Of a stretch of 64,000 bases of DNA, positions 9,749 through 61,678 are shown in pieces. How positions within the stretch are numbered: position 1 is the first letter of the stretch; every line of letters starts with the position of its first letter. The stretch is from IMG/VR virus record IMGVR_UViG_3300050821_009835, positions 62,001 to 126,000 of that record; one strand, 5' to 3'. Under the pieces are notes generated by a model. The model saw only the letters and a list, made by a program, of their open reading frames with translations, made no database searches and was not told where the DNA came from. Both the position numbers and the translations under genes were made by a program.

Positions 9749-9791
9749 AATTCAAACAAAAGTAAAAATTCAAATAAAAACGGAGATTAAA

Positions 9792-11624
9792 ATGTCAGAG
9801 ATTCACGTGAAGAAATCAGTAAAACTCTGGGTTGGCGGTTTGATTATCGCAGGATTGTTTTTCGGGATACATTACGGGATTATCCCAGTTCCTGCTATCG
9901 GTATTTTGAAGGCAGTTGTTCCACAGAAGGCGAATTTGCCAGACATTTCCGATGCTAAGATTGCTGATGTAAAACCTGAAGTCTTCCCATCCTCAATCCC
10001 TAACGGGTGCCAAGATCCTATCCGCGCTGAAAACTGGGCGTGGAATGCTAATATGGGTTGGAATTACTCCAATGGTGGAATCGATACCACCAAAGGCAGC
10101 ATTGCCGAAAAATACGGCGTCTGTGAACACATTGGACGGCAAGACGACAATGCTCAGATGCAGAATGATCTTCTTGCCTGTGCTAAGGACCTCAAAGAAC
10201 CACATTCAACCGAATGCTCTAACGGGGTTCAATTCATCACCATTATGGGCGATGGGGCAGGAGCATTTCTTGCAACTTTGAACGCTCAGGCTAAAAAGCT
10301 CTGTGCTGACTGTACGGCTGAAATTGTGGGAACTACGGGCTTCAGCAGAGGCGAAGATAAACTAATGGGGCCGCCCTCATGGAAGAATCCGCATTCAATG
10401 GTCGGCGACGGCTTAATTGCCGGGGTTCTTCGTGACGGTGATTGGAACACGGCTCAAAAGTATATTGGAGACAATGGACTTAAGAACAACCCGGATGAGA
10501 AAACATTTGATCCTGACGCGGTTAACTGGGTTAACGCTGGGGATTACGTCAAAGCAGCTGAGATGTATGTTGCCGGATATTGTGAAGACAGAAAAGTCAT
10601 CAAAAACGGCAAACTTACGGGCGAAACTGTCAATGTTTGTGTGAAAGGCGTAGTTACTTGGACGCCAGCCGATGTAACTGCTGCTGAAAAGGGCGGTGGT
10701 CTTCAAAATATCGTTAGCACCGAACAATACCGTTCACAAATGCCGAGTGCTTTAATCGGTATCAAGAAGTGGAATAAAACTCACTCGGACAAACTCGCTG
10801 CTCTACTCGCTGCTGCGCTTGAAGCAGGCGATCAAATTAGAGCTTATCCGAAGGCGCTCACGATCGCGGCTGATATTTCAGCTAAGATTTATGGGGAGCA
10901 AAATGGAGCTTACTGGGAGAAATATTACACCGGGACCACTGAACAAGTCTGCAGCAAACATTTAGAGGACGGCGCTTGCAGAGCAAGCAAGATGGCAGTA
11001 AAACTTGGTGGTAGCTATGCAGATAACATGCATGACGCCCTAGCTGAGTTTGGTGTCGATCCTGGAATGCCTTCTAACAATAACTTCAAGGCTACATACA
11101 CCATCTTCGCAAAGATTGTGGACCAGCAGTACCACCCTCTATTTGAGAAAACTCCTATCCCAGAATTCAAGGATATAGCAACGGCGGCTTATTTGTTACA
11201 AGCCAAGAGTCTTATGGATGATCCTGGCTCCGCCGCCGTCAAACCTCAATATTCGGCTGACGAGCAACCTACGGAGCAATTCGGTGATGTCAACAAAAAC
11301 ATCGAATTTAACACCGGATCAGCCGTACTTACTCCACAAGGGCTAGCAACTGTGGCTGGTATGAAGGATGATCTCGCCATCACTAAAGGCTATATCACTT
11401 TAGACGGCAATACCGATAACACGGGAAACGCTGATACCAACACAAAGCTATCCCTGGCTAGAGCAGAAGCTGTGAAGCTGGCAATCCAAAAAATGGCTCC
11501 TGGCGATTTCCCTTCGGAGCGATTCAGGGTTAATGGCTATGGGCCATCGAAGCCTGTTGCAGATAATTCAACCAACGAAGGACGGGCCAAGAATCGCAGA
11601 GTAGAAGTAATTCTGGCTAACTAA
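9792..11624 (+). CDS. ABC substrate-binding protein fused to a C-terminal OmpA-like peptidoglycan-binding domain
   Basis: N-terminal TM anchor; periplasmic-binding-like core (SRGEDK, DGDWN, VTWTP); OmpA motifs GNTDNTG...LSLARAEAV...GRAKNRRVEV. Confidence 0.85.
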   Translation: MSEIHVKKSVKLWVGGLIIAGLFFGIHYGIIPVPAIGILKAVVPQKANLPDISDAKIADVKPEVFPSSIPNGCQDPIRAENWAWNANMGWNYSNGGIDTTKGSIAEKYGVCEHIGRQDDNAQMQNDLLACAKDLKEPHSTECSNGVQFITIMGDGAGAFLATLNAQAKKLCADCTAEIVGTTGFSRGEDKLMGPPSWKNPHSMVGDGLIAGVLRDGDWNTAQKYIGDNGLKNNPDEKTFDPDAVNWVNAGDYVKAAEMYVAGYCEDRKVIKNGKLTGETVNVCVKGVVTWTPADVTAAEKGGGLQNIVSTEQYRSQMPSALIGIKKWNKTHSDKLAALLAAALEAGDQIRAYPKALTIAADISAKIYGEQNGAYWEKYYTGTTEQVCSKHLEDGACRASKMAVKLGGSYADNMHDALAEFGVDPGMPSNNNFKATYTIFAKIVDQQYHPLFEKTPIPEFKDIATAAYLLQAKSLMDDPGSAAVKPQYSADEQPTEQFGDVNKNIEFNTGSAVLTPQGLATVAGMKDDLAITKGYITLDGNTDNTGNADTNTKLSLARAEAVKLAIQKMAPGDFPSERFRVNGYGPSKPVADNSTNEGRAKNRRVEVILAN

Positions 11625-14713: not shown

Positions 14714-15421
14714 ATGAATTCACGAATCGCCAAGAAATCACCTGAAGAATCCAGATTCACTCAAATGATGACCGCTCAAGGATGGATGCTTACGGGTGGC
14801 AATAATGTGTGGTTGATCTTCAAGAAAAAGGGCGTGCCTGGCGAGATAGTTGTCACTCGTGGAACTAAAGAATGGGCTTATGATCGTTCTGAAGATGTAG
14901 ACGCTGATCCAGCAGCACAGGGTAAAGGTTTTCAATCTCTGCAAAAGGCTCTACCCACAATTCAGAAAGCCAAAGCTATACACGCTGATTTGGAAGATGA
15001 GGAGACCAATCCTCTTCCTGCTCCTTTTAGGCGAGAAGGACCTAACGTGCAACGCATTACGGGGACAGATCACCAAGGACATGCACAGTTGGGCGATGCT
15101 CAAAATGTTTTAAACTTCCTCCAAGCTAATGGCCCAAAACTCCCACAGCAAGTAGCCGAAGCATTCGGATGGTCGTATGAACAAGCCTATGGGATGCTAG
15201 AACACCTGCGTGCTGAGGGTAAGATAGGCATTAAGCAGATGCGCTATTACGTCAAGCAGGCCAGTCGGTTCCGTTTTAAAAGCAAGATCCTTTACCGCAA
15301 AACCAAGCCAGTCAGCATATTCCAGAGTGAGAACAAAACGATAAAAGAGGGCGGTCCGCAAGGCGACGACATCTCTCGCAAATCTGACGGCGATTACCCT
15401 AAAATGCGTCGCTCACGGTAG
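14714..15421 (+). CDS. Multi-domain protein with winged-HTH-like segment
   Basis: LPQQVAEAFGWSYEQAYGMLEHLRAEGKI; segments bounded by RIAK, KAKA and KQAS. Confidence 0.65.
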   Translation: MNSRIAKKSPEESRFTQMMTAQGWMLTGGNNVWLIFKKKGVPGEIVVTRGTKEWAYDRSEDVDADPAAQGKGFQSLQKALPTIQKAKAIHADLEDEETNPLPAPFRREGPNVQRITGTDHQGHAQLGDAQNVLNFLQANGPKLPQQVAEAFGWSYEQAYGMLEHLRAEGKIGIKQMRYYVKQASRFRFKSKILYRKTKPVSIFQSENKTIKEGGPQGDDISRKSDGDYPKMRRSR

Positions 15422-15433
15422 TATCTAGGCAAC

Positions 15434-15937
15434 ATGAATGTTCAAACAACCTCTGTGCTGCGTCTTGAGAACGCACTCCTCTTAGCAACTAAAGCCCATT
15501 ACGGCCAACTCGATAAAGCCGGGCAGCCCTATATCCTGCATCCAATTGCGGTGATGGAAATGATCCGAAAAGAGTTTGCCGAACACCCCAAAAAGATTCC
15601 AGCGGGTGTGACACTAGACGATCTGCTGATCGCCGCACTACTCCACGACACAGTCGAAGACACTGAAGTTACACTTGACCAAATCGATCAAGAGTTCGGC
15701 CCGGTTGTTCGCGAAATTGTGGATGGTGTGACACGACGTCGTGACTCTTGGAAAGATCATATTGGCGACGAGAATTACATAGATTTCATTTACCGCGCCA
15801 AACGACAGCCCGGCTCGCGGATCGTCAAAACTGCCGATCTTCACCACAACATGAGTCGTATTCATAACTTGCCGCCATCAGAACAAGGCATCTTGAATCG
15901 GTATCTCCGAGCGGAAAGGATTCTGAACGATGAGTAG
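15434..15937 (+). CDS. HD-domain hydrolase, SpoT/Mesh1-like (small alarmone hydrolase type)
   Basis: HYGQ, PYILHP, AALLHDTVEDT, VKTADLHHN. Confidence 0.88.
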   Translation: MNVQTTSVLRLENALLLATKAHYGQLDKAGQPYILHPIAVMEMIRKEFAEHPKKIPAGVTLDDLLIAALLHDTVEDTEVTLDQIDQEFGPVVREIVDGVTRRRDSWKDHIGDENYIDFIYRAKRQPGSRIVKTADLHHNMSRIHNLPPSEQGILNRYLRAERILNDE

Positions 15938-16118
15938 ATTCCTCGTAAGCTACGACCGCACCAAGAAGATCGTAGAAGATACTGAACTCAATGCGGCCTA
16001 TCTTGAGTCTATCATCAAGAAGGATCAAACTCGTTTGGAGATCGCGCTAAAACGACTCTTTCCCAAAGCAGATACCGTCTTTATTCGTCCCGCGCTTACA
16101 GGAGATGGGGATGCCTAA
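15930..16118 (+). CDS. Hypothetical protein
   Basis: Overlaps both neighbours by a few bases. Confidence 0.55.
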   Translation: MSRFLVSYDRTKKIVEDTELNAAYLESIIKKDQTRLEIALKRLFPKADTVFIRPALTGDGDA

Positions 16119-16341
16119 ACTCTTTAGTATTGAATCCCACGATCGTTTTGATAAATTCTTCAATATCATAGGACCGGAAGGGTTCACTCTTCGAGTCGAC
16201 CAAGATGATTTTCCCTCCAAATTAGCTAATAACTATGCTAGGAAAGTTGTTGCAATCCTCAATGAGAATTGGGAAGGTCTGGAGTGTGATAATGCGGGCA
16301 TTCTCTTTCTAGGTAAAAAGACAACAGTACCTGAAAGATAG
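16111..16341 (+). CDS. Hypothetical protein
   Basis: GGAG SD 6 nt upstream of ATG 16111. Confidence 0.55.
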   Translation: MPKLFSIESHDRFDKFFNIIGPEGFTLRVDQDDFPSKLANNYARKVVAILNENWEGLECDNAGILFLGKKTTVPER

Positions 16342-16362
16342 GTATTTCCCGTAGTTTAAACC

Positions 16363-17568
16363 ATGAGCACAATGACTACCCCTGTAGACCAGCGCATTGT
16401 CAACCTGAATCAGCAGCTCATTGAAGCCGCCGACGCTTATTACAAAAAAGCCTCTCCCATTATGTCTGACGTGGCATTCGACGCCAGTGAAAAAGAATTA
16501 AAACAGCTGGTTGCAGCCTACCCTCTGTATGCTTCACTTGCCACCTATCTACAGAAAGTCGGCTCTGACCTGAAGGCCGTTTCTGGTCGCACTCCTCACC
16601 GTATCCCGATGCTGAGCATCGAAAACATGTACACTGAAGAAGATTTCCTCGCTCAGTATGATCGTTTTGGTGGCGTCCCGGTTGTGATTGAACCGAAATT
16701 TGATGGCGTAAGTATTTCCATGACCTACGTGGACGGTGAACTGACCAAGGCGCTGACTCGCGGGGATGGTACCAGTGGCGAGGACATGACCGCGCAGGTT
16801 CGCTGCACCGAAATCCCCACCTCTCTGGGCAAGGTTCTTTCGAGGAGCAACGGCGAGCCCGTGAAGGTCCCCGCGCTGGTTGAAATTCGCGGCGAACTGG
16901 TCATGCACGAAACGACCTTGAAGGCTCTGAACGCCAAGTATGCCGCATCCGGCCAGAAGACCTACGCCAACACGCGCAACCTGACCGCTGGCACGATGAA
17001 GTTGAACCCGGCCAAGTATGCGGACACGATCCGCGAGCGCAAGATCACCATTCGCCCTTGGGACGTTATTGCTGACCAAGTTCCTGACAGCCGCATCGAG
17101 CGTCTCCGCATGATTAAAAATGCGGGGTTCAGCGAACCAGAAGGTATCTTGCTCACCGACCGTAGCCAAGTGATTCCGGCGCTGCGCAAGATGCTGGAAC
17201 TGAATAAAACTGCCGATATCTACCGCGACGGCGTAGTGATGAAGGTCGACAGCGTGAAAACAAGTCGCTCATTAGGACTGGCCTCCAAGTACACAAACTA
17301 TCAGACATGCTTCAAACCGCAAGGTGACAAGGGAGTTACTTATCTACGTGAAGTCGTGTGGCAAGTGGGAAGAACAGGTCGCATTTCTCCAGTGGGAATT
17401 GTAGATCCTATAGTCTTGGCTGGGGCTACTATTACTCGAGTCAATCTCAACAACATTACTTGGATTCGAGCTATGCGGATAAAGCTAGGAAGTCGGATTT
17501 CTTTGCTTCGCAGTGGGTCGGTAATTCCTGTAGTAGAACGAGTCTTGGATGACGATCCCTCAAAATGA
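16363..17568 (+). CDS. ligA: NAD+-dependent DNA ligase, N-terminal part (adenylation + OB domains)
   Basis: YY..D..FD domain Ia, MLSI, EPKFDG (KxDG), RNLTAG, DGVVMK, GRTGRISP, RSGSVIP; stops before the Zn finger. Confidence 0.93.
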   Translation: MSTMTTPVDQRIVNLNQQLIEAADAYYKKASPIMSDVAFDASEKELKQLVAAYPLYASLATYLQKVGSDLKAVSGRTPHRIPMLSIENMYTEEDFLAQYDRFGGVPVVIEPKFDGVSISMTYVDGELTKALTRGDGTSGEDMTAQVRCTEIPTSLGKVLSRSNGEPVKVPALVEIRGELVMHETTLKALNAKYAASGQKTYANTRNLTAGTMKLNPAKYADTIRERKITIRPWDVIADQVPDSRIERLRMIKNAGFSEPEGILLTDRSQVIPALRKMLELNKTADIYRDGVVMKVDSVKTSRSLGLASKYTNYQTCFKPQGDKGVTYLREVVWQVGRTGRISPVGIVDPIVLAGATITRVNLNNITWIRAMRIKLGSRISLLRSGSVIPVVERVLDDDPSK

Positions 17569-18499
17569 AATTCATTCGATGGCCCAGTTCTTTGCAGCGG
17601 TAATACTTCGCCAAATTCTGGGCTTTTTCTAACTGAAATATGTATTCACTCTTTACCTCAAAAATCCAGTTAAGGCGAGGCACGTAGAAATCTGGATAGT
17701 AACGTCGTTCTGTCCCATCCACATCAGTGTAAAAGATAGGTAACAACGAAGTCATTTCAAAATCAAAATCTTCTTCTCGAAATCCCTGTTGTAACAATTG
17801 CTCCAGAACTCCCGATTCATACCCAGCTAGAACGAGTACCCGACCCGATGGCAACCGAAATTTTTTGTGCTGATTCTTAGCCGCTGTAGACATGACCTTT
17901 CTGGCAATTTCATGGTTTTGCATTGGATGCCTTACTCCATAATTTTCAATAAAAGTCGCCACCGATTTTGCCTGTACAGCCTTTGTTTTCAAAGGATGCC
18001 CGCCAAATCTAGAAAGCCAAGTGGCTTGAGTCTTCGCGAGGATCTCTGGCACCTTTGAGGGGTGGTCCATTCCATACTTCTCTACCATAGATTGGTGAAT
18101 AGCATCTTGAACGATTTTGACAGAAAAGGGATTCTCAAAACCGTATCTTTCCAAACAAGTTTGCTTTCCTCTAGCCCGGATCCTTGGATTCTGGAAACCA
18201 ACGTCGTGAGTCTCTCTCATCGTCTTCTGTTTCTCGGCGTCTTTCATCCAGAGATTTCTATCTTTAAGCAACGCGGGGCAGTTTGCGAGGTTGTCCACGC
18301 AACATAATAATTGATTTTTGAATTGGAATCTTGCGATTCCACCACAACCGTAGGCACAAAAACCGGACCCTACATAGAGTTGTGGCTTACTCTTAGTCCA
18401 TGTTTTTCCTTTCAATTTGTCGATCGGACAATGAGCACGATGGGCATTGTGACTTTGGCTATTCTTGAATTCTCTGCCACATTCTGAACAAACTAGCAT
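17471..18499 (-). mobile_element. Homing-endonuclease-like gene (YG.ENP repeats + PD-(D/E)xK) splitting ligA
   Basis: N-terminal C2H2-like motif, repeated [EK][RK]YG..[NH]P units, YYPDFY...IFEVKS; SD AAGGA upstream. Confidence 0.8.
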
Positions 18500-18567
18500 A
18501 CTAATTCCTTTGTTACAAATGGATTAGAAAGCTACCCGATTTTTGAGCATTAGTGGTAGTATTACGA

Positions 18568-19500
18568 ATGATGACCACTACTGAAATTATCCCTCCTAAA
18601 AACTGCCCTGAATGTGGCCAAAAGTTAGATGTCTTTGAAGACAGCACAGAAGATGCAACCGAACACATTTATTGCACCAACACAGATTGCAAAGGTCGTG
18701 TGGTTGGGCATTTTTGCTTCGTGGGCGATCGCGAGGTTTTAGAGATTGACGGCCTTGGGCCGGAACTCTCAGCCAAACTAGTCACGGATGACTATGCACG
18801 AAACGTGGCTGAACTGGTAGAGTTTGCTGACGAAATTAACGATGCCATCACTAAGAATGGTGAAGGGCCAGTTACTAAATCACTCCAGAAAGAGGGTTTC
18901 ACCAGCGCCGTCGTAAAGATGGCGAAGTCGGTTCAACTGGCGAAGCATGCTTCTTGGGAGCGTTGGATTGCTGCACTGGGCATACCGATGGTTTCGGACA
19001 CGCTGGGTAAGATCATCGCAAAGGAGATGAAACTGACCGCTGATGATATGGTGAATCTAGTCAGCAAGTTCCGAGACTTTCTAAATTTGACCATCGCTGG
19101 CGTAGGACCAAGTAAGAAAGCTGCTCTACAGGATTGGCTCAAGACACCAGCTAATATCGACATCATCCAGTCTCTGGCGAAATCTGGTGTCAAGCCGACT
19201 CCGCTGGCTGCACCAAAAAACGTGAATGGACCGCTCAGGGATGTCGTTTTTTGTATCACAGGCGGGTTTCCTAACTTTGGGGAACGTACCGATATTGAAT
19301 CAAAATTATCCTCTCTCGGAGCTACCGCAAAAAGCGGAGTATCTAAAAAAACAAATCTCCTCCTTGTCGGGGAAGATGCTGGCGGCACCAAATTGAATGC
19401 CGCTAAGAAACTAGGTGTACAGCAAGTCGGAGAAGACTGGCTCCAGAGAGTCTATACTGAGCATGGTCTCCAAACTTGTGGTAATAAGTTTCCTATCTAA
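18568..19500 (+). CDS. ligA: NAD+-dependent DNA ligase, C-terminal part (Zn finger, HhH, BRCT)
   Basis: CPECG...CTNTDC, HhH motifs IDGLGP / ALGIP / IAGVGP, BRCT FCITG...VSKKTNLLLVG. Start is ATG 18568 or 18571. Confidence 0.92.
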   Translation: MMTTTEIIPPKNCPECGQKLDVFEDSTEDATEHIYCTNTDCKGRVVGHFCFVGDREVLEIDGLGPELSAKLVTDDYARNVAELVEFADEINDAITKNGEGPVTKSLQKEGFTSAVVKMAKSVQLAKHASWERWIAALGIPMVSDTLGKIIAKEMKLTADDMVNLVSKFRDFLNLTIAGVGPSKKAALQDWLKTPANIDIIQSLAKSGVKPTPLAAPKNVNGPLRDVVFCITGGFPNFGERTDIESKLSSLGATAKSGVSKKTNLLLVGEDAGGTKLNAAKKLGVQQVGEDWLQRVYTEHGLQTCGNKFPI

Positions 19501-20278
19501 TCACAAAATTGAATTTGAATCCGGCCTTCAAACAGGCTTCGCGCTTCCTCAGATTATCTTCTTTCTGAACCATGAACGTCCACATTGATTTAACTTCAAT
19601 GAGCCAATTCTGTTCTGGGATGAAAATGTCTGGATAATACCGCGCCTTCTTACCATTACTTCTAGTGTACCAAATTGCCGGCATCTTTGTCGGATCAGTT
19701 TCTATTGAACAAACGGCTACCCCGCTCTTCAGAAGTTCCTTTAATACTTTACCTTCTGCTCCTTGAAACACAAAAGTTTTGCCCTGCAACTCTACGGTTT
19801 TCTTGCTCAATCGACCTTTCTGGAGAATCCGAAACATCATTGGATTCTGGAAGTGATGAGGGAAGCCGTAGTGTTTCATAAATGTTGCCACCTTCTTGGC
19901 TTGTATATCAGAGTTTTGGCTGGGGTTTTCCACACCATAGTTGGCTTTTAAGGTGGCGCGTATTTTCTTTTGAACTGTCTTTGAAGCAAAGGGATTCTTC
20001 ACTCCATATCTTTCTAAATTAGTGGCGGCAACCCTGTCTTGAAGTTCCTTAGTCTTATAAGGGTGATCAACCCCGTACCTCTCAATATTATGCTTTTTAC
20101 GCTGTGCCTGAACGTCAGGATTTTGATTAGGGTGGGGCACACCAAATCGTTCGGTGCAGGTCTTAATGGTTTTCTTTTGTATACCGGGGCAAGCGTTAGG
20201 AGATGGAGCACAGTAAATAGCCCCATTCTTCATTTGAAACAATCCAGTCCTGCCACAACCTTTACAATTATGCATCAT
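19493..20278 (-). mobile_element. Second homing-endonuclease-like gene of the same family
   Basis: ERYGVDHP / ERYGVKNP / NYGVENP repeats; YYPDIF...LIEVKS; GAGG SD upstream of ATG 20278. Confidence 0.8.
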
Positions 20279-20352
20279 AGGAGTCCTCACTAGATATGCA
20301 GAAAGTTGAATTACCTCTTTCGACGGTAAACACCGTAGTATAAGACAAGGCA

Positions 20353-20664
20353 ATGTACGGTATCTGCCCAACTATCGAAGGATTTCACAGCCGTGAGCCG
20401 CACGAACAATTTGATGGGTGCAGCGGCTGGACGCCTGTGCCGCCGAACCCAGATCAGTCTCTGCGTGAACGTTTTCACCATGTGACGGTACTGGCTGGAT
20501 ATCAGAATGAAGGTCCCAGCCGAATTGTCGCTCAGTGGTACGATTTCCTGATGAATCAGGGGCGTGAAAGCTTTATTAAGATGCTTGAACGTTATGAACG
20601 AAGCAATGGTAACCCCATGGATGATCCTGAACCGGAAGCAAGCCTAAGCAAGCCTATGCTGTGA
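20353..20664 (+). CDS. Hypothetical protein
   Basis: ORF track; preceded by TAGTAT motif. Confidence 0.65.
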   Translation: MYGICPTIEGFHSREPHEQFDGCSGWTPVPPNPDQSLRERFHHVTVLAGYQNEGPSRIVAQWYDFLMNQGRESFIKMLERYERSNGNPMDDPEPEASLSKPML

Positions 20665-20726
20665 ATTTCACAACACGCAAACGGTTAAAAATCAATTTGG
20701 ATTGAGGTAAATTCAGGAGGAATAAA

Positions 20727-21098
20727 ATGTGTTTATCAGTTGTAAAACAAATCATCAAAAAACCTTCTTCTAAGGTTGTCACGGGGTATAAGTCTTTTGG
20801 CTTAAGTGAGGGCGTACGGGGTGCGAAGGCTCTGGAATTTCTTTTTATGGGAGGATTTGTACAAACTGACACTTGGCTAAAAGCGTCAGGAAGAGCTATA
20901 GGCAAACGCAATAAGAAATATCCAGCAGGTTTTCATGTCTATGCTTCCAAAGTCGGGGTCGAAAGAGAACAGGAAAGTATGGCGATTAAAGTAAAAATTA
21001 GAAAAATTGTTGCCCATGGTCATCAAGAAAAAGGAAGCAGACTAAAATGCTACGTGGCGAAAGAGATGTTTGTGAGCTCGGATGACGCTAATTGGTAA
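20727..21098 (+). CDS. Hypothetical basic protein
   Basis: SD AGGAGG; Lys-rich. Confidence 0.7.
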   Translation: MCLSVVKQIIKKPSSKVVTGYKSFGLSEGVRGAKALEFLFMGGFVQTDTWLKASGRAIGKRNKKYPAGFHVYASKVGVEREQESMAIKVKIRKIVAHGHQEKGSRLKCYVAKEMFVSSDDANW

Positions 21099-21692: not shown

Positions 21693-22321
21693 CACTTCTT
21701 TTCACCATCTCCCGGTGGGACGTCGAAACCGTTAGCTGTTAGTGCAGCCGCGCCTTGCTTCGCTGGCCCTCCACCATAAGCAATTTGATAGTTACCACCG
21801 CCCTCTGGCTGGAACAGTGGGAATCCGAGGAAGAAGTTACCCTGAAACTCCAACCAGAATTGATGCAAAGGATGGTACCCGGCCCCAATCAAAGTCAGTT
21901 TTGCTTCTGCCACAGGCCGCTCTATGTTCGGGGTTGAAGTTGGTTGCATAGCCATGGTAACAAGGTGCGGCCAGATAGGAATATCTACAAGTTCGGACCA
22001 AGTCTTCTGTTTATTAACAAACTGATCCATGAATTTCTCCCAACCCGTGACGTTGTCAAAGATACTCACATCGTTGTGGAGCATGTAAAGAGAATGGCCG
22101 TAAATGAGTGTAGTTTGTACCTTGGGAACAATGAAATTGACTCTGAGAACCGGGGCTAGGCCATACCATTTAATAGACGAACCAGTTCCAGCTAAACCAC
22201 CTTCAGCATCCCATTCAAATCGTTCTCCTTCAGGCATCAATTTGACGCCGAGAATCTTACCTCTGCTCTTTGGGTAAAGAACCTTGGTGTGACGTTCGGT
22301 AGATGCTGGATTGCGGGCCAT
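21689..22321 (-). CDS. Hypothetical protein, probably structural
   Basis: Last gene of the minus-strand baseplate run; AGGAG SD. Confidence 0.6.
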   Translation of the reverse strand: MARNPASTERHTKVLYPKSRGKILGVKLMPEGERFEWDAEGGLAGTGSSIKWYGLAPVLRVNFIVPKVQTTLIYGHSLYMLHNDVSIFDNVTGWEKFMDQFVNKQKTWSELVDIPIWPHLVTMAMQPTSTPNIERPVAEAKLTLIGAGYHPLHQFWLEFQGNFFLGFPLFQPEGGGNYQIAYGGGPAKQGAAALTANGFDVPPGDGEKKC

Positions 22322-22518
22322 TAGGATGCTCCTTTAGCAAAGCTGTCGTATGGTTTGTTTAGCACACCAAAAGGTAGAAATTCAAAAACTTCACCATCGT
22401 TTGAAACTGCCACCAAGAATTCCCATCCAGAATCAAGGCATGCTGCTCCCTTACAGAAAAGAACACCGTAATCCCGGTTGAAGAAATATCGAGATTTCAC
22501 TTCGATGATTCTGCGCAA
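22321..22518 (-). CDS. Hypothetical protein
   Basis: TAATG overlap with the downstream gene. Confidence 0.5.
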   Translation of the reverse strand: MRRIIEVKSRYFFNRDYGVLFCKGAACLDSGWEFLVAVSNDGEVFEFLPFGVLNKPYDSFAKGAS

Positions 22519-22530
22519 TTTCGGCTGAAA

Positions 22531-23301
22531 TCAAAATTGCAGTATCCATTCTATAATTATGTTGATTCCCGCCGGAAGTATAATCGGGGGTGTGGTAATA
22601 TAATTCACCAAAACCACAGAATTCAGATTCGGAACCGGGACACCCTGCGAATTCGGTGGAACAAAATAGGGAGCGGTTAGCATGTTAGTGCCTGTGAAGC
22701 TTCCTGCCGTGTACTGACCACCACCGATAAGCCCCATCTCGCGAATACCCACCCCAATTAAATTATCAGTGGTTGCATTTAAGATGGTTTGGAAACTAAC
22801 CTGCAGAGAAAAATTGGGCAGCGGGTTAAAATTCGAATCCACGAATTGAATCGAAGACAAACCCTTGCGTAGCACTTGAGAGATTAAAGCTGTCTGCTGA
22901 GGGGTTTGAGTAGGCTGCGTTTGTGGTGCCCATGTAGGAGATCCAGTACCGAGTGCAAGCCCCCAGATACCGAAGAGTGGGCCAGTATGATTTGGTTGCG
23001 GGTTTGCTGAGTTAGCGGGTGTCTGTCCAAATTGATAGGGGTTCTGGGGAGTGAATGCTTCACCTGGTGCGTAATTCGAAGCCCAGAAGGCGAAGAGATA
23101 TTTTGTCGTATTTACAATGATGTTATTATCCTGAAAGATAACCTCACCGTTATCCTCACGACGAGCGATGACACGTCCGTGACCTATGGGATTGGAAATT
23201 TGTTCCGCTAAGTTATTACGTTGCGCTTGTTGAGCAGCCCGTGCTGTGTTACCTTCAGAGCCAATTAAATATTTCTGATTATCATCCATTACAGAATTCA
23301 T
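22531..23301 (-). CDS. Baseplate/tail-fibre attachment-like structural protein
   Basis: WGLALGTG...IREMGLIGG pattern typical of tail-fibre proximal domains; structural context. Confidence 0.6.
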   Translation of the reverse strand: MNSVMDDNQKYLIGSEGNTARAAQQAQRNNLAEQISNPIGHGRVIARREDNGEVIFQDNNIIVNTTKYLFAFWASNYAPGEAFTPQNPYQFGQTPANSANPQPNHTGPLFGIWGLALGTGSPTWAPQTQPTQTPQQTALISQVLRKGLSSIQFVDSNFNPLPNFSLQVSFQTILNATTDNLIGVGIREMGLIGGGQYTAGSFTGTNMLTAPYFVPPNSQGVPVPNLNSVVLVNYITTPPIILPAGINIIIEWILQF

Positions 23302-23483: not shown

Positions 23484-25619
23484 TTAAGATTCGAAATCGC
23501 TTTGCACGCCCGTAACTTCATTACTCAAAGGTTCATCTCCATTACGAATAAAATTCCAACGAGTGTAACGATCCGGGACTGGATAATTCTTAGCACGTAA
23601 TGCTTGAAGCGAAGGTCGATCCGTAAACCTCACCATACGTCCGTCAGAAAACTTAACCATCCAGGTTTTGGTTTTCTCTTTGGATTGACAGAGATAGATA
23701 GCCATATCAGCTCCAACGAATCCTTCAGGGAAGTACATATCTGTACCGACTGAGATACTCTTAGGAATCCCGTCGGCAACCTCATAACGCAGATCGTTGT
23801 CAGTCTCCACTGCTACGGCATCGGTAAACTCCGGGGTTTCTGCACTAGAACCCTTCATCATCTGAAACAGCTTATTACGAAAATTATTCCCCAACGATAA
23901 TGTTCCTGAGGGTTTACCACGTTGGTCGTAAACCACCACATACAATGGCTTCGGTTGTGTCTTCAGGGAACGCGACTTGTACTGACGGATAACGCGAGCC
24001 ACATCTCCCAAATCGTTCTTATCGGGCTTCTTAGTGAGAAGTTCCAAATGACGATAGGCGGGTGCCCGCTGGATGAGTTTGCCGGAGCCAGCATATTTGC
24101 GAGTCACCACATGAGCCTGAGGATATTCCCGTTCAAAAGCTGAAACAACTTGAGACAAAAACTCTTCATCTCCAGTCCACCACTGACCTTCAGAACTTTC
24201 ACCAATTGTAATTAAACCGGAAGGAGATATTCTAGCATCTCCTCGAGGAATGCTATCAAACATCCCACCAGAAGTGGGCAAACCCAGTTTTGAGAACCAC
24301 GCTACGTGGCCGAATCGCTTATTCAAATCTGCATTTTTAAAAATCTCAACCTGGCCATTGACAATTGCCCATAGATCGTACCGATTCAATGCTCCCGTGA
24401 CCACTCGCTTTTGTGTCTCGTCGATAAAACTGATGGGCATCTTGAAGGTGCCCTCATAAGTCTTGATCGTCGGATCTCGGCTGACATCGGAAAACTGAGA
24501 CTGAGTGTCCGACTCATTGGTCATGTCTTTGTAGCACTGGAGCACAGCTGCATACAGTTTCACGATCACGTCTTGTTCATACTCCATAGACAACATGAAG
24601 CTGGAAACCTCGTCTAGTAATGCTCGAATTCCCTCGGTGACCATCTCCTGCATGCCCTGAGGATTGTCCTCAACACAGGGGAACTTCAGAGTAAACACTG
24701 TGAAATTGGGGATACCAAGATCCAACTGGAGAGTAACTTCCGGTCGTTCAGCTCGAACGATTGTGATGTTTAGTTCTCCGTTCATCGAGGATAGATAAGC
24801 TGTTTTTGAAGCTACTTTAGTTAATGGAATCTCAGTTGCCCAATTTTCCACTGCACCACCTACTTGTACGGCTTTCACTTTGTCAATCTTCCATGCCTTA
24901 ACAGGATGAACAGCTCCTCTGTGGGCAAGATGAGCGCCGTTTTCTAACAGCCACTTAGACAAATTCTTTGATAGATATTTTTGAAGCTTCTTGCCCACTT
25001 GAGATTGTACAGCAGCTTCTTCTAAACGACGACGCTGTCCTTCTGTCATTTTGTTAGCTAGATAGTCCAATTCCCACTTGATATCATCCGGTGTTTCTGG
25101 TCTATTGACAGGTTGGGCATTTACAATTTGGTCTTTACGTCCATCCAAAAGATATTGCCAAGACTTACGCTGTGCTTCTGTTCCAAGTCCTTTTTTAAGC
25201 TTCTCTTCAAGTTCTTGCTTCTGACGTATATCATCAGTGTATTTTATACGCCAGTACAGCGCCTCGCCTATACTATCCTCATCTGGCACTACATCTCCTA
25301 AAAGATCAGAGCCATTTATAGCAAAAATATAGCCAAATGGATCCTTACCTTCTATGAACTTTGTAGATTTAGATCCAAACATCGAACCGCCCAATGCATA
25401 AATCGCTGCATAACCAAAATTATCTGTCATGTACACCCTGTCCGGCACAGGTGCTTGCATGGCTCGACTCTTTGCTTTCTCAGGCATAGTGATTTCACGA
25501 GGTTGAATACCCTCTGCCATAATTTTTTGCGCTAGATCTTCACGGTCGGTCCCATGATAATATACACGAGCCTTCGCTTCATCGTGGATGGGTGCAGCAT
25601 GTTTTTCCATATGCATCAA
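23484..25619 (-). CDS. Polyvalent protein with N-terminal ADP-ribosyltransferase-like domain
   Basis: YYHGT...VYMTDNFGYAAIYA...PDED; three further unrecognised segments; linkers KHAA, KVASKTAY, RKYAG. Confidence 0.65.
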   Translation of the reverse strand: MMHMEKHAAPIHDEAKARVYYHGTDREDLAQKIMAEGIQPREITMPEKAKSRAMQAPVPDRVYMTDNFGYAAIYALGGSMFGSKSTKFIEGKDPFGYIFAINGSDLLGDVVPDEDSIGEALYWRIKYTDDIRQKQELEEKLKKGLGTEAQRKSWQYLLDGRKDQIVNAQPVNRPETPDDIKWELDYLANKMTEGQRRRLEEAAVQSQVGKKLQKYLSKNLSKWLLENGAHLAHRGAVHPVKAWKIDKVKAVQVGGAVENWATEIPLTKVASKTAYLSSMNGELNITIVRAERPEVTLQLDLGIPNFTVFTLKFPCVEDNPQGMQEMVTEGIRALLDEVSSFMLSMEYEQDVIVKLYAAVLQCYKDMTNESDTQSQFSDVSRDPTIKTYEGTFKMPISFIDETQKRVVTGALNRYDLWAIVNGQVEIFKNADLNKRFGHVAWFSKLGLPTSGGMFDSIPRGDARISPSGLITIGESSEGQWWTGDEEFLSQVVSAFEREYPQAHVVTRKYAGSGKLIQRAPAYRHLELLTKKPDKNDLGDVARVIRQYKSRSLKTQPKPLYVVVYDQRGKPSGTLSLGNNFRNKLFQMMKGSSAETPEFTDAVAVETDNDLRYEVADGIPKSISVGTDMYFPEGFVGADMAIYLCQSKEKTKTWMVKFSDGRMVRFTDRPSLQALRAKNYPVPDRYTRWNFIRNGDEPLSNEVTGVQSDFES

Positions 25620-27550
25620 TTCATTTCTAGACCCTGAAATACATCTGAAGAAATCTCCCAGGCAAGACGTAAACGTGGGGCAACCAGCCCGTTCGGATGA
25701 TTGATATCCCAGTTACTTACTTCTCCCGTTGGAGGCAGCGGCTCCGTAATACTTGGTGTACCCGGCTGAAGCAGCATAATCCATCTATACGAAGGAATAT
25801 AGGCTTGACCAATACCAACCATCCGCCAAGTCAACGTTCCATCTGTAGTCGTGCCATTGACATTGATAGCCCAAGCTGAGACTGAAGCACTGCCGGGGTC
25901 AACTTCAAATTCCCCGTCTACATTGTTCAGCGTAATTGATTCATCAGTAGAAGCCAAACAGGAAAAGACGCCGTTGTTACCAGGATTTGTGAAACCTGTA
26001 ATCGTGAATGTTCTCCCCAGATAGGCATTGTCGCCCCCGCCTGTGATATTACCTAAATAAGTTGTGCTGCCGTTAAACTCCACTTGGCCCTGAGATGATG
26101 TCAATGTGAAATTAAGCGTAGGTGGATTCGGGGTGGAACCAGTCATACCATAGTACCCGCTGGTTCCAAACAACGATGGCGGACTATTCGAGCCTGTGCC
26201 AACGACCATCTGAGTGTTCCCATTTGAATCCATGATGATCTGGCTTTCAAAGAAATTTGTGTCAGGTGCCCAATTTGCTATTCCGAGAACATAGTCTCCG
26301 TTCAAGCCAGGTACATAGGCTGATTGTAGTGTTGGAGTTACAAGCCCAGATCCGGCTTCTGCCGCAGAAGGAACGGGAGCGGGCAATTGCACAACCATCT
26401 TAAATGTTCCCGAGTACGGCGGGTTGCCCACAGAAGGAGGATTACCTGTTCGGATCGTAGTCGTATCGCTGATCTTACCTGTGATATCGAATATGTTCCC
26501 ACCATTTACGCAGCCTGTAATAGTGACTTGCATGCCATCATGGATTGCATAATTAGCATTTGTGTACGTAAAAGTTGCTAAAGTTTCAGTTGCAACCGTG
26601 TTAACAATATTGAACGTGATTTCCGGCAAAGTTACCCATTGGGATTCTGGTATACTCATAAGCGGACCAGAGAATTGGCGTCCGTGAGCGGCAACTGTTG
26701 TTTGAGGATTCACGGGGTTCAAAATAGGAGCTACAATCAACATCGGGTTGAATGGTGGTTCTTCAACAATCCTAAAGATAATCGATAAATTGTCTGCAAT
26801 TCCTGGCTCAGTGGGAGACCACATATCCTGCGGAAAGTAACTAATGTCTTCCGTGTAGGCATCAATGTTATCGTTTTCGCCGAATACTACAATGAATTCA
26901 AGCCCCACATGGGCGGGTTTAGTCAAATCAATGGCTGTATACAATGAACTAACAACCAGCTGAAGCTGATTGAGAGACTCTATGTCTTCCAGCGGATTGC
27001 TTCCGCCCACATTGATAGAAACTTGTATTGCATTACGATCAGACTGATCGTACGGGCTGGGGGGCGGTAATAGAGTTGAGGCATCAGAAGGGATAAATTT
27101 GTAAAGCTCTTGCACAACCACTACAAGGCCAGTGTATGCAAAGATGACATCTTGAATCGCCTTGACCGTAGCACCTTCTTTGTAGGCTTGAAGTAGGGCG
27201 ACAAGCATGTTACGATAGGATAAATCAGATTGTCCGTCCGGGAGATCGAAGACCCCAGTTGAAGGATAAGCACTACTGATAAACAGCGGGTCAGCCCAGC
27301 GACGTTTAATGTCAGATGGAGTTAAATACTGAGGATTTTTAGCGATTAGATCGTAAGCATAGAAATACTCGCATCTAGCAATTTCTTGCGCTACAGCACG
27401 AAGAGCCACGCCCCATATAGATTGATCGTTCCTAGTGGCATAAAAATTGGCCGTGTTGTTGAAGAGGCGTCGAGTACTAGCATCTTCATACAATAAAAGA
27501 TCAGTTCTGTTCGGGGTGTATAAGACATCAGGTTGAACGTATTTAGTCAT
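25616..27550 (-). CDS. Baseplate wedge / tail protein I-like protein
   Basis: LQAYKEGATVKAIQDVIFAYTG...TKPAHV N-terminal domain, then T/S/N/P-rich beta domains; GGAG SD at 27550. Confidence 0.6.
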   Translation of the reverse strand: MTKYVQPDVLYTPNRTDLLLYEDASTRRLFNNTANFYATRNDQSIWGVALRAVAQEIARCEYFYAYDLIAKNPQYLTPSDIKRRWADPLFISSAYPSTGVFDLPDGQSDLSYRNMLVALLQAYKEGATVKAIQDVIFAYTGLVVVVQELYKFIPSDASTLLPPPSPYDQSDRNAIQVSINVGGSNPLEDIESLNQLQLVVSSLYTAIDLTKPAHVGLEFIVVFGENDNIDAYTEDISYFPQDMWSPTEPGIADNLSIIFRIVEEPPFNPMLIVAPILNPVNPQTTVAAHGRQFSGPLMSIPESQWVTLPEITFNIVNTVATETLATFTYTNANYAIHDGMQVTITGCVNGGNIFDITGKISDTTTIRTGNPPSVGNPPYSGTFKMVVQLPAPVPSAAEAGSGLVTPTLQSAYVPGLNGDYVLGIANWAPDTNFFESQIIMDSNGNTQMVVGTGSNSPPSLFGTSGYYGMTGSTPNPPTLNFTLTSSQGQVEFNGSTTYLGNITGGGDNAYLGRTFTITGFTNPGNNGVFSCLASTDESITLNNVDGEFEVDPGSASVSAWAINVNGTTTDGTLTWRMVGIGQAYIPSYRWIMLLQPGTPSITEPLPPTGEVSNWDINHPNGLVAPRLRLAWEISSDVFQGLEMN

Positions 27551-61621: not shown

Positions 61622-61678
61622 ATTATCCCATACCTAATTCATTGAACAACGCCGTAGAATATAAATGGAGGGAACAAC

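What the first reader, a model, noticed from the sequence alone, without database searches (positions are those of the whole stretch)
16363..19500. NAD+-dependent DNA ligase split into two genes by an antisense endonuclease
Seen: the N-part ends just after the OB motif RSGSVIP and the C-part starts just before the Zn finger, with no ligase domain lost. The roughly 1-kb insert is an opposite-strand endonuclease ORF plus about 68 non-coding bases, too little for a self-splicing intron core. The C-part has its own TAGTAT motif (18557-18562) and tandem ATGs. Known: Aeh1 nrdA is split by mobE and works as two polypeptides. Inference: a two-chain LigA, and the break defines the endonuclease target site.
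Basis: partly seen in the sequence, partly recalled or inferred. Interest (0 to 1): 0.7.

Follow-up and report, generated by a model that had tools for sequence, protein, structure and literature searches.

The report
Phage DNA ligase split by endonuclease
A soil jumbo phage carries its NAD-dependent DNA ligase as two separately promoted genes, cut apart between two protein domains by a backwards-facing mobile endonuclease gene; relatives show the uncut, cut and drifted-apart stages, which suggests how the two-subunit ligases annotated in T5-like phages may arise.

Summary
ligN (16363-17568, domains Ia, NTase and OB) and ligC (18568-19500, Zn finger, HhH and BRCT) align to E. coli LigA residues 4-395 and 399-666, so no domain is lost. 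Between them lies an antisense 342-aa ORF (17471-18499) of Pfam DUF7487, with an invariant PD...ExK nuclease triad.

Two corrections:
- The endonuclease ORF has no stop inside the insert. It runs 98 bp into the antisense of ligN.
- TAGTAT alone is not enriched. It is the -10 part of a genome-wide bipartite promoter-like motif that sits 4-12 nt before ATG starts, including those of ligN and ligC.

No intron or intein signal was found.

Relatives show every stage:
- an uninterrupted OB|Zn junction (L007, L008/L009);
- the same antisense endonuclease (L006, L010, L013, L018);
- a split with no endonuclease (L015);
- halves 3.2 kb apart in the cultured Tunturiibacter phage Tunturi_5;
- a three-piece ligase (L010).

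Other support:
- Both halves are under purifying selection (dN/dS 0.15 and 0.06).
- Both appear in a soil metatranscriptome.
- A complex model scores 0.64 against 0.00 for the best control, through the native OB/Zn interface.

A T5-like phage (PG07) has the same split point, so this is a new variant of a known kind. That the break marks the cleavage site is untested.

The parts
16328..16357 (+). Promoter-like element of ligN (TACCTGAAAG, 13 nt, GTAGTTT), ending 5 nt before the ATG
   Evidence: It has the form of the genome-wide motif TACCyGAWTT-N11-15-GTAGWWT. GTAGWWT lies 3-13 nt before the ATG of an ORF of at least 60 aa 16 times out of 161 in the 265-kb genome, against 2 of 165 in the reversed sequence. 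Relatives have -10-like boxes at the same distance from the ligN ATG.
16363..17568 (+). ligN: N-terminal LigA chain (domain Ia, nucleotidyltransferase with KxDG, OB fold), 401 aa
   Evidence: Pfam Nlig-Ia, DNA_ligase_aden (144 bits) and DNA_ligase_OB. It aligns to E. coli LigA residues 4-395. dN/dS is 0.15 against L013. RNA contigs lie at 16677-16827 and 17141-17388.
17471..17568 (.). 98-bp antisense overlap: the last 32 codons and stop of ligN against the last 32 codons and stop of HEG1
   Evidence: The same overlap (80 or 98 bp) occurs in all five HEG1-bearing loci. In the HEG1 frame the tail has dN/dS about 2; in the ligN frame it is 0.28 (29 codons). The tail is modelled at pLDDT 40-54. 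This suggests the tail is run-on with no selected role as protein.
17471..18499 (-). HEG1: free-standing DUF7487 endonuclease gene, 342 aa. It has N-terminal Cys clusters, repeated (K/R)YG-x-x-NP helical repeats and a C-terminal PD-(D/E)XK-like nuclease domain. The conserved core is 17558-18499.
   Evidence: Pfam PF24308 at 153 bits. D270, E281 and K283 are invariant in 60 homologues. The AF2 model has pLDDT 85, and residues 200-330 match TnsA (Z 7.7), Vsr (Z 7.1) and I-Bth0305I (Z 6.3). It is present or absent at the same site among relatives.
18500..18567 (.). 68-nt divergent intergenic region. It holds the ligC promoter-like element (18533-18562: TACCCGATTTT, 12 nt, GGTAGTAT). On the other strand an AGGA lies 7 nt before the HEG1 ATG.
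   Evidence: The element is conserved upstream of ligC in L013, L018 and the endonuclease-less L015, each time 5-7 nt before the ATG.
18568..19500 (+). ligC: C-terminal LigA chain (Cys4 Zn finger, HhH, BRCT), 310 aa from tandem ATGs
   Evidence: Pfam BRCT and weak HHH_2; PHROG 3869 positions 386-653 and PHROG 3498. It aligns to E. coli LigA residues 399-666 and T. filiformis LigA residues 403-662, with the four Cys aligned. dN/dS is 0.06. RNA contigs lie at 18619-18778 and 18826-19355. It belongs to a stand-alone clade of about 310-aa homologues at 40-79% identity.
19493..20371 (-). HEG2: second, paralogous antisense DUF7487 endonuclease gene (292 aa from the TTG), overlapping the ligC stop by 8 bp
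   Evidence: Pfam PF24308 at 153 bits. It is 33% identical to HEG1 and 44% to the gene at the same position in L006. It is absent from the closest relative L013, where an antisense HNH-motif ORF lies downstream of ligC instead.
20312..20341 (+). Another copy of the promoter-like motif, before the next + strand ORF (ATG 20353), lying inside the 5' end of HEG2

Best explanation

What the sequence shows:
- The cassette's left end supplies the stop codon of the N-part. In turn the endonuclease ORF borrows its last 28 codons and its stop from the antisense of the ligase.
- The cassette's right end carries a copy of the phage's own promoter-like motif, placed 5 nt before a new ATG.

What is inferred:
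- The C-part is transcribed and translated on its own, probably as a leaderless or near-leaderless mRNA.
- The two polypeptides, Ia-NTase-OB and Zn-HhH-BRCT, reassemble without covalent joining through the native OB/Zn-finger interface. They probably close around nicked DNA as single-chain LigA does, giving a working two-chain ligase.
- The endonuclease lineage at this site moves horizontally between related phages by homing and is sometimes lost. Because only a precise deletion would re-fuse the gene, the split outlives the endonuclease, and the halves can drift apart.
- The two-subunit ligase of T5-like phages may have arisen the same way.
For: Anatomy:
- Domains and break point.
- Junction codons against intact alleles: L007 reads VLDD|TGEDIIFPSVCPEC, while the window reads VLDDD-PSK* ... 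MMT-TTEIIPPKNCPEC.
- The ligN stop lies within or next to the conserved C-terminal motif of the endonuclease in all five loci.

No splicing signal:
- Rfam gives no hit in the window region at E<=1. In L006, L007, L010 and L013 only tRNAs pass the gathering threshold.
- Pfam finds no intein or Hint domain.
- No joints appear in the RNA contigs.

Both halves functional:
- dN/dS is 0.15 and 0.06 against the 72-78% identical L013.
- Catalytic Lys and Zn cysteines are retained.
- There is a stand-alone ligC clade of 14 clusters of about 310 aa.
- The split persists without any endonuclease in L015-L017 and L005. In the cultured Tunturiibacter phage Tunturi_5, gp116 and gp108 are 3.2 kb and 7 genes apart.

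Own expression signals:
- The bipartite motif gives 20 hits in the genome, against 2 in the reversed sequence and a mean of 4.5 (maximum 10) in 30 shuffles. About 13 of the 20 lie 4-12 nt before an ORF's ATG.
- The ligC copy is conserved in L013, L018 and L015.
- The metatranscriptome run X2 has 100%-identical contigs only inside ligN and ligC within 15300-20800.

Assembly:
- Complex prediction scores 0.64 against 0.00 for the best of 3 controls. That mark was reached by 51 of 78 solved complexes and 2 of 108 mismatched pairs. The three runs share at least 70% of contacts, and the partner's pLDDT is at least 82.
- The interface is ligN 331-377 (OB) with ligC 3-51 (linker and Zn finger). The Zn finger is known to hold OB and HhH in position (PMC5052709, PMC7470946).

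Mobility of the endonuclease:
- Ligase sister pairs differ in state: L010 (with it) against L007 (fused junction), and L018 (with it) against L015 (without).
- HEG1 of L013 is 62% identical to that of L018 but only 42% to the window's, although the L013 ligase is 75% identical to the window's.
- The family occurs in several copies per genome in large phages.

Precedents:
- Aeh1 nrdA split by mobE is active as two chains (PMC3045599).
- T5-like phages have LigA subunits A and B. In PG07 the split is at the same linker.
Against: - No biochemical evidence exists here, or as far as I could find in the literature, that any two-gene LigA seals nicks.
- The complex model may pass from memory of single-chain LigA structures. 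It shows likeness of the interface, not binding.
- RNA support is thin: five short contigs at depth 2-5, the junctions are not covered, and coverage elsewhere in the phage is equally patchy at about 20%.
- dS is saturated (1.5-2.5), so the dN/dS values are rough.
- The genome also encodes a 268-aa ATP-dependent-ligase-like protein, so LigA need not be essential.
- Endonuclease activity, target site and current mobility of HEG1 are inferred only.
- The promoter motif was derived from this genome, and no transcription start has been mapped.
Confidence: 0.8

Rival explanations
1. The two halves no longer work together. The N-part acts alone as a minimal adenylyltransferase or ligase, or the C-part has become an independent DNA-binding or BRCT scaffold protein. 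The gene pair is then two proteins with separate jobs.
For: The halves are 3.2 kb apart and separated by seven genes in Tunturi_5. Each half has its own promoter-like element. The genome has a second, ATP-type ligase-like gene.
Against: In every relative examined whose contig extends past the N-part, both halves are present on the same strand and in the same order. The complex model scores 0.64 against 0.00 for the best of 3 controls, a mark reached by 51 of 78 solved complexes and 2 of 108 mismatched pairs; the runs share at least 70% of contacts and the partner's pLDDT is at least 82. The OB-facing N-terminal segment of ligC (ExIxPxxCPxC) is conserved as in intact LigA. HhH is described as providing essential DNA binding for LigA (PMC7470946).
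Confidence: 0.1
2. The insertion killed the ligase, and the two ORFs are decaying pseudogene fragments.
For: An essential-looking gene is interrupted by a selfish element. Another ligase-like gene exists in the genome.
Against: Both ORFs are intact, with dN/dS of 0.15 and 0.06. Catalytic Lys and Zn cysteines are kept. The split is conserved down to about 40% identity, including in a viable cultured phage. Both have promoter motifs, and RNA contigs lie on both.
Confidence: 0.04
3. The insert is removed after transcription or translation (intron, split intein, ribosomal bypass), giving a single-chain LigA.
For: Phage DNA-metabolism genes often host introns and inteins. [quoted passage not shown]
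Against: Rfam finds no intron. Only 68 nt of the insert is non-coding. The inserted ORF is on the opposite strand. The N-part ends 12 residues after RSGSVIP, and the C-part starts about 11 residues before the first Zn cysteine, so there is no room for intein halves; Pfam finds none. The same split exists with 3.2 kb and 7 genes in between. No joint appears in the RNA contigs, though the junctions are not covered.
Confidence: 0.03
4. The join is an assembly artefact or chimera.
For: The source is a metagenome-derived contig.
Against: The same four-gene or three-gene layout is found in independent samples and assemblers (L006, L010, L013/L014, L018/L019). A 178-kb contig from a public run covers the stretch without a difference.
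Confidence: 0.01

Closest known systems
NAD-dependent DNA ligase subunits A and B of T5-like phages (Demerecviridae; T5 ligA AAU05253 and ligB AAU05254)
   Same: LigA is encoded as two same-strand genes. In the one T5-like locus I examined, Vibrio phage PG07, subunit A ends ...VIRSGGIIPKIIDVR* and subunit B begins MNIPTNCPSC. That is the same OB|Zn linker as here. PHROGs has separate families for the two halves, 3359 and 3498.
   Different: The ligases are only about 23-27% identical to this one. In PG07 only two small ORFs, of 44 and 103 aa and not annotated as endonucleases, lie between the halves, and no DUF7487 match was found there. In T5 the two subunits have consecutive protein accessions. 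So the cause of the T5-like split is not visible there. I found no published activity test of the T5 pair.
Aeromonas phage Aeh1 nrdA split by the free-standing endonuclease gene mobE (Crona et al. 2011, PMC3045599)
   Same: [quoted passage not shown] Their products reassemble into an active enzyme without RNA or protein splicing.
   Different: mobE is an HNH-family endonuclease (PMC2790892 abstract); here the endonuclease is DUF7487 (PD-(D/E)XK-like) and antisense to the ligase. In Aeh1, element-derived tails on both chains are essential for activity and holoenzyme assembly. Here the element adds only PSK to one chain and MMT to the other, and the modelled interface is the native OB/Zn one.
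'Fractured genes' of marine metagenomes (Dassa et al. 2009, PMC2677866) and their gene-breaking model
   Same: Phage replication and repair genes are broken in place by a free-standing endonuclease gene that brings gene-control elements. The paper includes one intein-less case (SbcD-like). Its model predicts later loss of the endonuclease and uncoupling of the halves. Both stages are seen here, in L015 and Tunturi_5.
   Different: Most fractured genes rely on split inteins; this one has none. Their new endonuclease family is Vsr-like, with a diverged active site. DUF7487 keeps a canonical PD...ExK triad.
PD-(D/E)XK-fold homing endonucleases I-Ssp6803I and I-Bth0305I
   Same: Restriction-endonuclease-like fold used for homing. 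The I-Bth0305I catalytic domain matches the HEG1 model at Z 6.3.
   Different: There is no sequence-level relation: phmmer against the PDB finds nothing. [quoted passage not shown] HEG1 is free-standing, with a long helical-repeat DNA-binding-like region and Cys clusters.

Membership tests
NAD+-dependent DNA ligase (LigA) | Domain Ia plus nucleotidyltransferase domain with the KxDG lysine | tested here: met
   Pfam Nlig-Ia and DNA_ligase_aden. EPKFDG aligns to E. coli ELKLDG.
NAD+-dependent DNA ligase (LigA) | OB fold, Cys4 Zn finger, HhH and BRCT in that order | tested here: met
   OB is in ligN. The four Cys, the HhH region and BRCT in ligC align to T. filiformis LigA residues 403-662 and E. 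coli LigA residues 399-666.
NAD+-dependent DNA ligase (LigA) | All domains on one polypeptide | tested here: not met
   There are two ORFs separated by a 1.0-kb antisense gene. It is filed as a two-gene LigA, not a canonical one.
NAD+-dependent DNA ligase (LigA) | NAD+-dependent nick sealing | not testable with these tools
   This needs enzyme assays with both chains.
T5-type two-subunit LigA | Split in the OB|Zn linker into two same-strand genes | tested here: met
   The break points in the window and in Vibrio phage PG07 are the same.
Free-standing homing endonuclease gene | Encodes a nuclease with intact catalytic residues | tested here: met
   D270, E281 and K283 (PD...EVK) are invariant in 60 homologues. 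The fold matches TnsA, Vsr, I-Bth0305I and Hjc at Z 5.5-7.7. These Z values are middling, so the call rests on motif and fold together.
Free-standing homing endonuclease gene | Present or absent at the same site among related genomes, with a phylogeny that disagrees with the host gene | tested here: met
   L010 against L007 and L018 against L015 are ligase sister pairs with different states. HEG1 identities (L013-L018 62%, L013-window 42%) contradict the ligase tree. The sample is small, at 5 copies.
Free-standing homing endonuclease gene | Co-conversion of flanking host sequence | tested here: inconclusive
   The first roughly 135 nt of ligC in L013 are as close to L018 (69 and 62%) as to the window (68 and 63%), unlike the rest of the gene. 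This region is also the conserved Zn finger.
Free-standing homing endonuclease gene | Site-specific cleavage of the endonuclease-less allele, and biased inheritance in co-infection | not testable with these tools
   This needs in vitro cleavage and phage crosses.
Pfam DUF7487 (PF24308) | Score above the gathering cut-off of 27 bits | tested here: met
   HEG1 scores 153.4 bits and HEG2 153.5 bits. A third copy exists elsewhere in the genome.
Self-splicing intron (group I or II) | Recognisable ribozyme core around the inserted ORF | tested here: not met
   Rfam gives 0 matches at E<=1 over 15500-21000. Only 68 nt of the insert is non-coding.
Split intein ('fractured gene') | Intein N- and C-halves at the ends of the two host ORFs | tested here: not met
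   There are no Hint or intein Pfam hits. The host ORFs carry only 3-4 extra residues at the break compared with intact alleles.
Aeh1-type fragmented enzyme assembled by element-derived tails | Unique element-derived tails on both chains that are required for activity and assembly of the enzyme | tested here: not met
   The tails are PSK and MMT only. The modelled interface uses native OB and Zn-finger residues.

The most novel reading that the evidence does not exclude
DUF7487 is a previously unrecognised family of PD-(D/E)XK homing endonucleases. One of its lineages targets the OB|Zn linker of phage LigA as an antisense cassette. The cassette ends the upstream gene fragment, borrows its own stop from the host gene's antisense strand, and brings an outward promoter that re-starts the downstream fragment. 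Within one phage clade this gives a complete natural series: intact, split, endonuclease lost, halves uncoupled, and three-piece. It would explain the origin of the two-subunit ligases of T5-like phages, and it would show that LigA tolerates being cut at two different points.
Probability: 0.5. Interest if true: 0.6.

Novelty: new variant of a known kind. Interest (0 to 1): 0.5.

Why it matters
Three reasons this matters:

1. It offers a visible candidate cause for an annotation that has stood since the T5 genome, LigA 'subunits A and B'. It comes with a set of natural alleles, from intact to three-piece, that can be tested for how a clamp-shaped multidomain ligase reassembles from separate chains.

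2. It points to an uncharacterised Pfam family (DUF7487) as a likely homing-endonuclease family, with long helical-repeat DNA-binding modules. Such proteins are of interest for target-site recognition.

3. It shows how a selfish insertion can be made harmless by bringing a promoter and start codon for the downstream fragment.

The same analysis also gave a genome-wide promoter-like motif with leaderless spacing for a clade of soil jumbo phages whose closest cultured relative infects Acidobacteriota.

Tried and rejected
- megablast of 16000-20500 against cultured phages found nothing.
- The search for related loci with ligC in viral contigs confirmed no locus. Relatives were reached through ligN and through the protein database.
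- TAGTAT alone as a promoter signal is not enriched. The sigma-70 consensus scan found fewer promoter-like sites than shuffles, and none before ligC.
- phmmer of HEG1 against the PDB found nothing. Foldseek against the PDB gave only weak hits at E>=0.03, though all were PD-(D/E)XK nucleases.
- HEG remnants were sought between the halves in L015 and Tunturi_5 by tblastn at E<=1. None was found.
- I checked whether the upstream HD-domain gene is also split, since L013 has a 357-aa version. The extra N-terminal part of L013 is unrelated to the window's upstream ORF, so it is not a split.
- A second RNA-run search found only the same run. The RNA contigs do not reach either junction, so they say nothing about splicing.
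- The literature holds no paper mentioning DUF7487. I found no biochemical study of a two-gene LigA.
Full report
**What is there**

The window is bases 62001-126000 of a 264.9-kb IMG/VR phage record from soil, estimated 78% complete.

ORF listing and Pfam/PHROG scans give four genes in the region:

| Gene | Coordinates | Strand | Length | Content |
|---|---|---|---|---|
| ligN | 16363-17568 | + | 401 aa | Nlig-Ia, adenylation domain, OB fold |
| HEG1 | 17471-18499 | - | 342 aa | Pfam DUF7487, 153 bits |
| ligC | 18568-19500 | + | 310 aa | Zn finger, HhH, BRCT |
| HEG2 | 19493-20371 | - | 292 aa | second DUF7487 gene |

- Against solved structures, ligN aligns to E. coli LigA residues 4-395 and ligC to residues 399-666. 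The KxDG lysine and the four Zn cysteines are in place.
- The break therefore falls exactly in the OB|Zn linker, and nothing is lost.

**Junction anatomy**

Intact alleles exist in relatives. L007 reads ...RSGDVIPQITKVLDD-TGEDIIFPSVCPEC..., and L008/L009 are also uninterrupted. In the window the N-part reads ...RVLDDD-PSK* and the C-part MMT-TTEIIPPKNCPEC. The insert is therefore about 17557-18576, and it adds three or four residues to each chain.

HEG1 has no stop codon inside the insert.
- Its conserved core ends with NFILR (17558-17572); the paralogue HEG2 ends FNFVIR*.
- The ligN stop TGA (17566-17568) lies inside those codons.
- HEG1 then reads on for 28 codons through the antisense of the OB-coding sequence, to a stop at 17471-17473. 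That gives a 98-bp overlap.
- The same arrangement, with an 80- or 98-bp overlap, is found in all five loci that carry this endonuclease.
- The tail evolves as ligN dictates: dN/dS is 0.28 in the ligN frame and about 2 in the HEG1 frame, over 29 codons. It is modelled at pLDDT 40-54. It therefore looks like run-on, not a selected part of the protein.

**Not an intron, intein or artefact**

- Rfam finds nothing at E<=1 over 15500-21000. In four related loci only tRNAs pass the gathering threshold.
- The two chains leave no room for intein halves, and Pfam finds none.
- The layout recurs in independent samples and assemblies. A DNA contig of a public run covers the stretch without a difference.

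**Relatives show a series of states**

A maximum-likelihood tree of the concatenated ligase is.

| State | Loci |
|---|---|
| OB-Zn junction uninterrupted | L008/L009 (whole gene intact); L007 (but split in the NTase domain) |
| Antisense DUF7487 gene at the same point | window, L013/L014 (ligase 75% identical), L006, L010, L018/L019 |
| Same split with two small + strand ORFs instead of an endonuclease | L015-L017; L005 (N-part and first small ORF only, contig ends) |
| Same split, halves 3.2 kb apart with seven genes between (one a thymidylate kinase) | cultured Tunturiibacter phage Tunturi_5, gp116 and gp108 |
| Second break inside the NTase domain (between MLSIENQY... and KxDG), with an antisense GIY-YIG/NUMOD3 endonuclease gene in the insert | L007 and L010 |

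- No endonuclease remnant is detectable in L015 or Tunturi_5.
- Because of the second break, L010 encodes LigA in three pieces.
- Sister pairs differ in state: L010 has the endonuclease and L007 is fused at OB|Zn; L018 has it and L015 does not.
- The endonuclease copies do not track the ligase. L013 and L018 are 62% identical in HEG1, but L013 and the window only 42%, although the L013 ligase is closest to the window's.
- HEG1-type and HEG2-type copies are 32-35% identical to each other, and each type stays at its own site.
- Together these are the population signatures of a homing endonuclease gene. Cleavage itself is untested, and the co-conversion signal is only suggestive.

**The endonuclease**

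- DUF7487 has no literature and no sequence relative in the PDB.
- Sixty homologues keep D270, E281 and K283 (YYPDF...EVKS) invariant.
- An AlphaFold2 model (pLDDT 85) shows Cys clusters, a run of helical (K/R)YG-x-x-NP repeats and a C-terminal alpha/beta domain.
- That domain matches TnsA (Z 7.7), Vsr (Z 7.1), the I-Bth0305I catalytic domain (Z 6.3), Hjc and VRR-NUC.
- The Z values are middling, so the nuclease call rests on motif and fold together.
- Relatives occur, often in several copies, in large cultured phages, where they are annotated as endonuclease, HJR nuclease or homing endonuclease.

**Expression signals**

TAGTAT alone is not enriched: 27 matches against 20.3 +/- 4.5 expected. 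It is, however, the -10-like half of a bipartite motif, TACCyGAWTT-N11-15-(c)cGTAGWWT.
- A regex for this motif hits the 265-kb genome 20 times, against 2 in the reversed sequence and a mean of 4.5 (maximum 10) in 30 local shuffles. About 13 of the 20 hits end 4-12 nt before the ATG of an ORF.
- Copies precede the HD-domain gene (15395-15424), ligC (18533-18562) and the ORF at 20353 (20312-20341). ligN has a variant copy (16328-16357) that the regex missed and that was found by its GTAGTTT box.
- The ligC copy is conserved at the same distance from the ATG in L013, L018 and the endonuclease-less L015.
- The spacing implies leaderless or near-leaderless mRNAs. This is an inference, because no start site has been mapped. 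The motif was also derived from this genome, so the enrichment figures are partly circular. Its placement before ATGs and its conservation in relatives were not built into the pattern.
- One soil metatranscriptome run has five 100%-identical contigs in 15300-20800. All lie inside ligN or ligC, none in HEG1, HEG2 or the flanks, and none shows a joint.
- A control stretch shows the phage is covered equally patchily, at about 20%. This is weak support for transcription of both halves and says nothing about the junctions.

**Are the halves a working enzyme?**

- Both are under purifying selection against L013: dN/dS is 0.15 for ligN and 0.06 for ligC, with dS saturated.
- Stand-alone ligC homologues form a clade of 14 clusters of about 310 aa.
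- A complex prediction scores 0.64 against 0.00 for the best of 3 controls. That mark was reached by 51 of 78 solved complexes and 2 of 108 mismatched pairs. The runs agree in at least 70% of contacts, and the partner's pLDDT is at least 82.
- The interface is OB residues 331-377 with ligC residues 3-51. This is the native OB/Zn contact, so the pass may come from memory of single-chain LigA structures. It shows likeness, not binding.
- Reviews describe the Zn finger as holding OB and HhH in position, and the HhH domain as essential for DNA binding and for closing the clamp (PMC5052709, PMC7470946). This argues that ligN needs ligC.
- The genome also has a 268-aa ATP-type ligase-like gene, so essentiality is not given.

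**Comparison with known systems**

- Two-gene LigA is already annotated in T5-like phages (PMC4319617, PMC3632103). In Vibrio phage PG07 the break is at the same linker (...RSGGIIPKIIDVR* / MNIPTNCPSC), with two small ORFs not annotated as endonucleases in between.
- Genes split by free-standing endonucleases are known: Aeh1 nrdA/mobE, phage 25 gene 43 and T4 gene 39/60 (PMC2988022). Aeh1 NrdA works as two chains, but it needs element-derived tails (PMC3045599). No such tails exist here.
- Dassa et al. (PMC2677866) proposed that loss of the endonuclease and uncoupling of the halves follow such insertions. This clade shows those stages.
Free-standing phage endonucleases typically cut hundreds to thousands of bp from their gene (PMC2988022).

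**Verdict**

The two-chain reading is well supported computationally, with confidence of about 0.8. The target-site inference remains open.

The case is a new variant of a known kind. What is new is the endonuclease family, its antisense overlapping design with an outward promoter, and the series of evolutionary states, including a three-piece ligase.

Noticed in passing
L010:4373-8773 (IMGVR_UViG_3300010379_000014) and L007:3090-7839: A second break of LigA lies inside the nucleotidyltransferase domain, between MLSIENQY... and the KxDG motif. The insert carries an antisense GIY-YIG/NUMOD3 endonuclease gene. L010 therefore encodes LigA in three pieces. L007 encodes it in two, with the OB|Zn junction fused. 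Each piece has a GGTATACT-type box upstream.
   Followed up: partly
whole genome G000; window copies at 15395-15424, 16328-16357, 18533-18562, 20312-20341 and 61631-61660: A genome-wide bipartite promoter-like motif, TACCyGAWTT-N11-15-GTAGWWT, ends 4-12 nt before ATG starts. This suggests leaderless or very short-leader mRNAs in this phage clade.
   Followed up: partly
window 19493-20371 (-); L006:9162-9983 (-); L013:5834-6508 (-): The site just downstream of ligC is a second endonuclease hot spot. A distinct DUF7487 lineage (HEG2) sits there in the window and in L006. An antisense 224-aa ORF with an HNH motif lies downstream of ligC in the closest relative, L013.
   Followed up: partly
G000:C1:247390-249450 (L003:949-3009), outside the window: A third DUF7487 copy lies inside a 675-687-aa ORF. 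It has an extra repeat region and about 290 additional C-terminal residues with no Pfam match.
   Followed up: no
G000:C1:206437-207240 (L020:1252-2055), outside the window: A 268-aa ORF matches the ATP-dependent DNA ligase domain (PF01068, 43 bits) and is preceded by the same promoter-like motif. It is a possible second ligase in the phage.
   Followed up: no
L007:4239-5075 (-): The 2.4-kb insert in the L007 ligase also holds an ORF with an ART-PolyVal ADP-ribosyltransferase domain (57 bits).
   Followed up: no
L005:5279-5956 (-): An antisense GIY-YIG gene sits directly upstream of the ligN start in L005. The ligase locus attracts endonuclease genes of at least three families.
   Followed up: no
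window 21758-22806, 24669-24907 and 26568-26700: The soil metatranscriptome run X2 has further 100%-identical contigs on these stretches, so the phage, or its DNA, was present in that RNA sample.
   Followed up: no
L013:6550-6914 and 9430-11567: The closest relative carries a cluster of at least nine tRNA genes within 6 kb downstream of the ligase locus.
   Followed up: no
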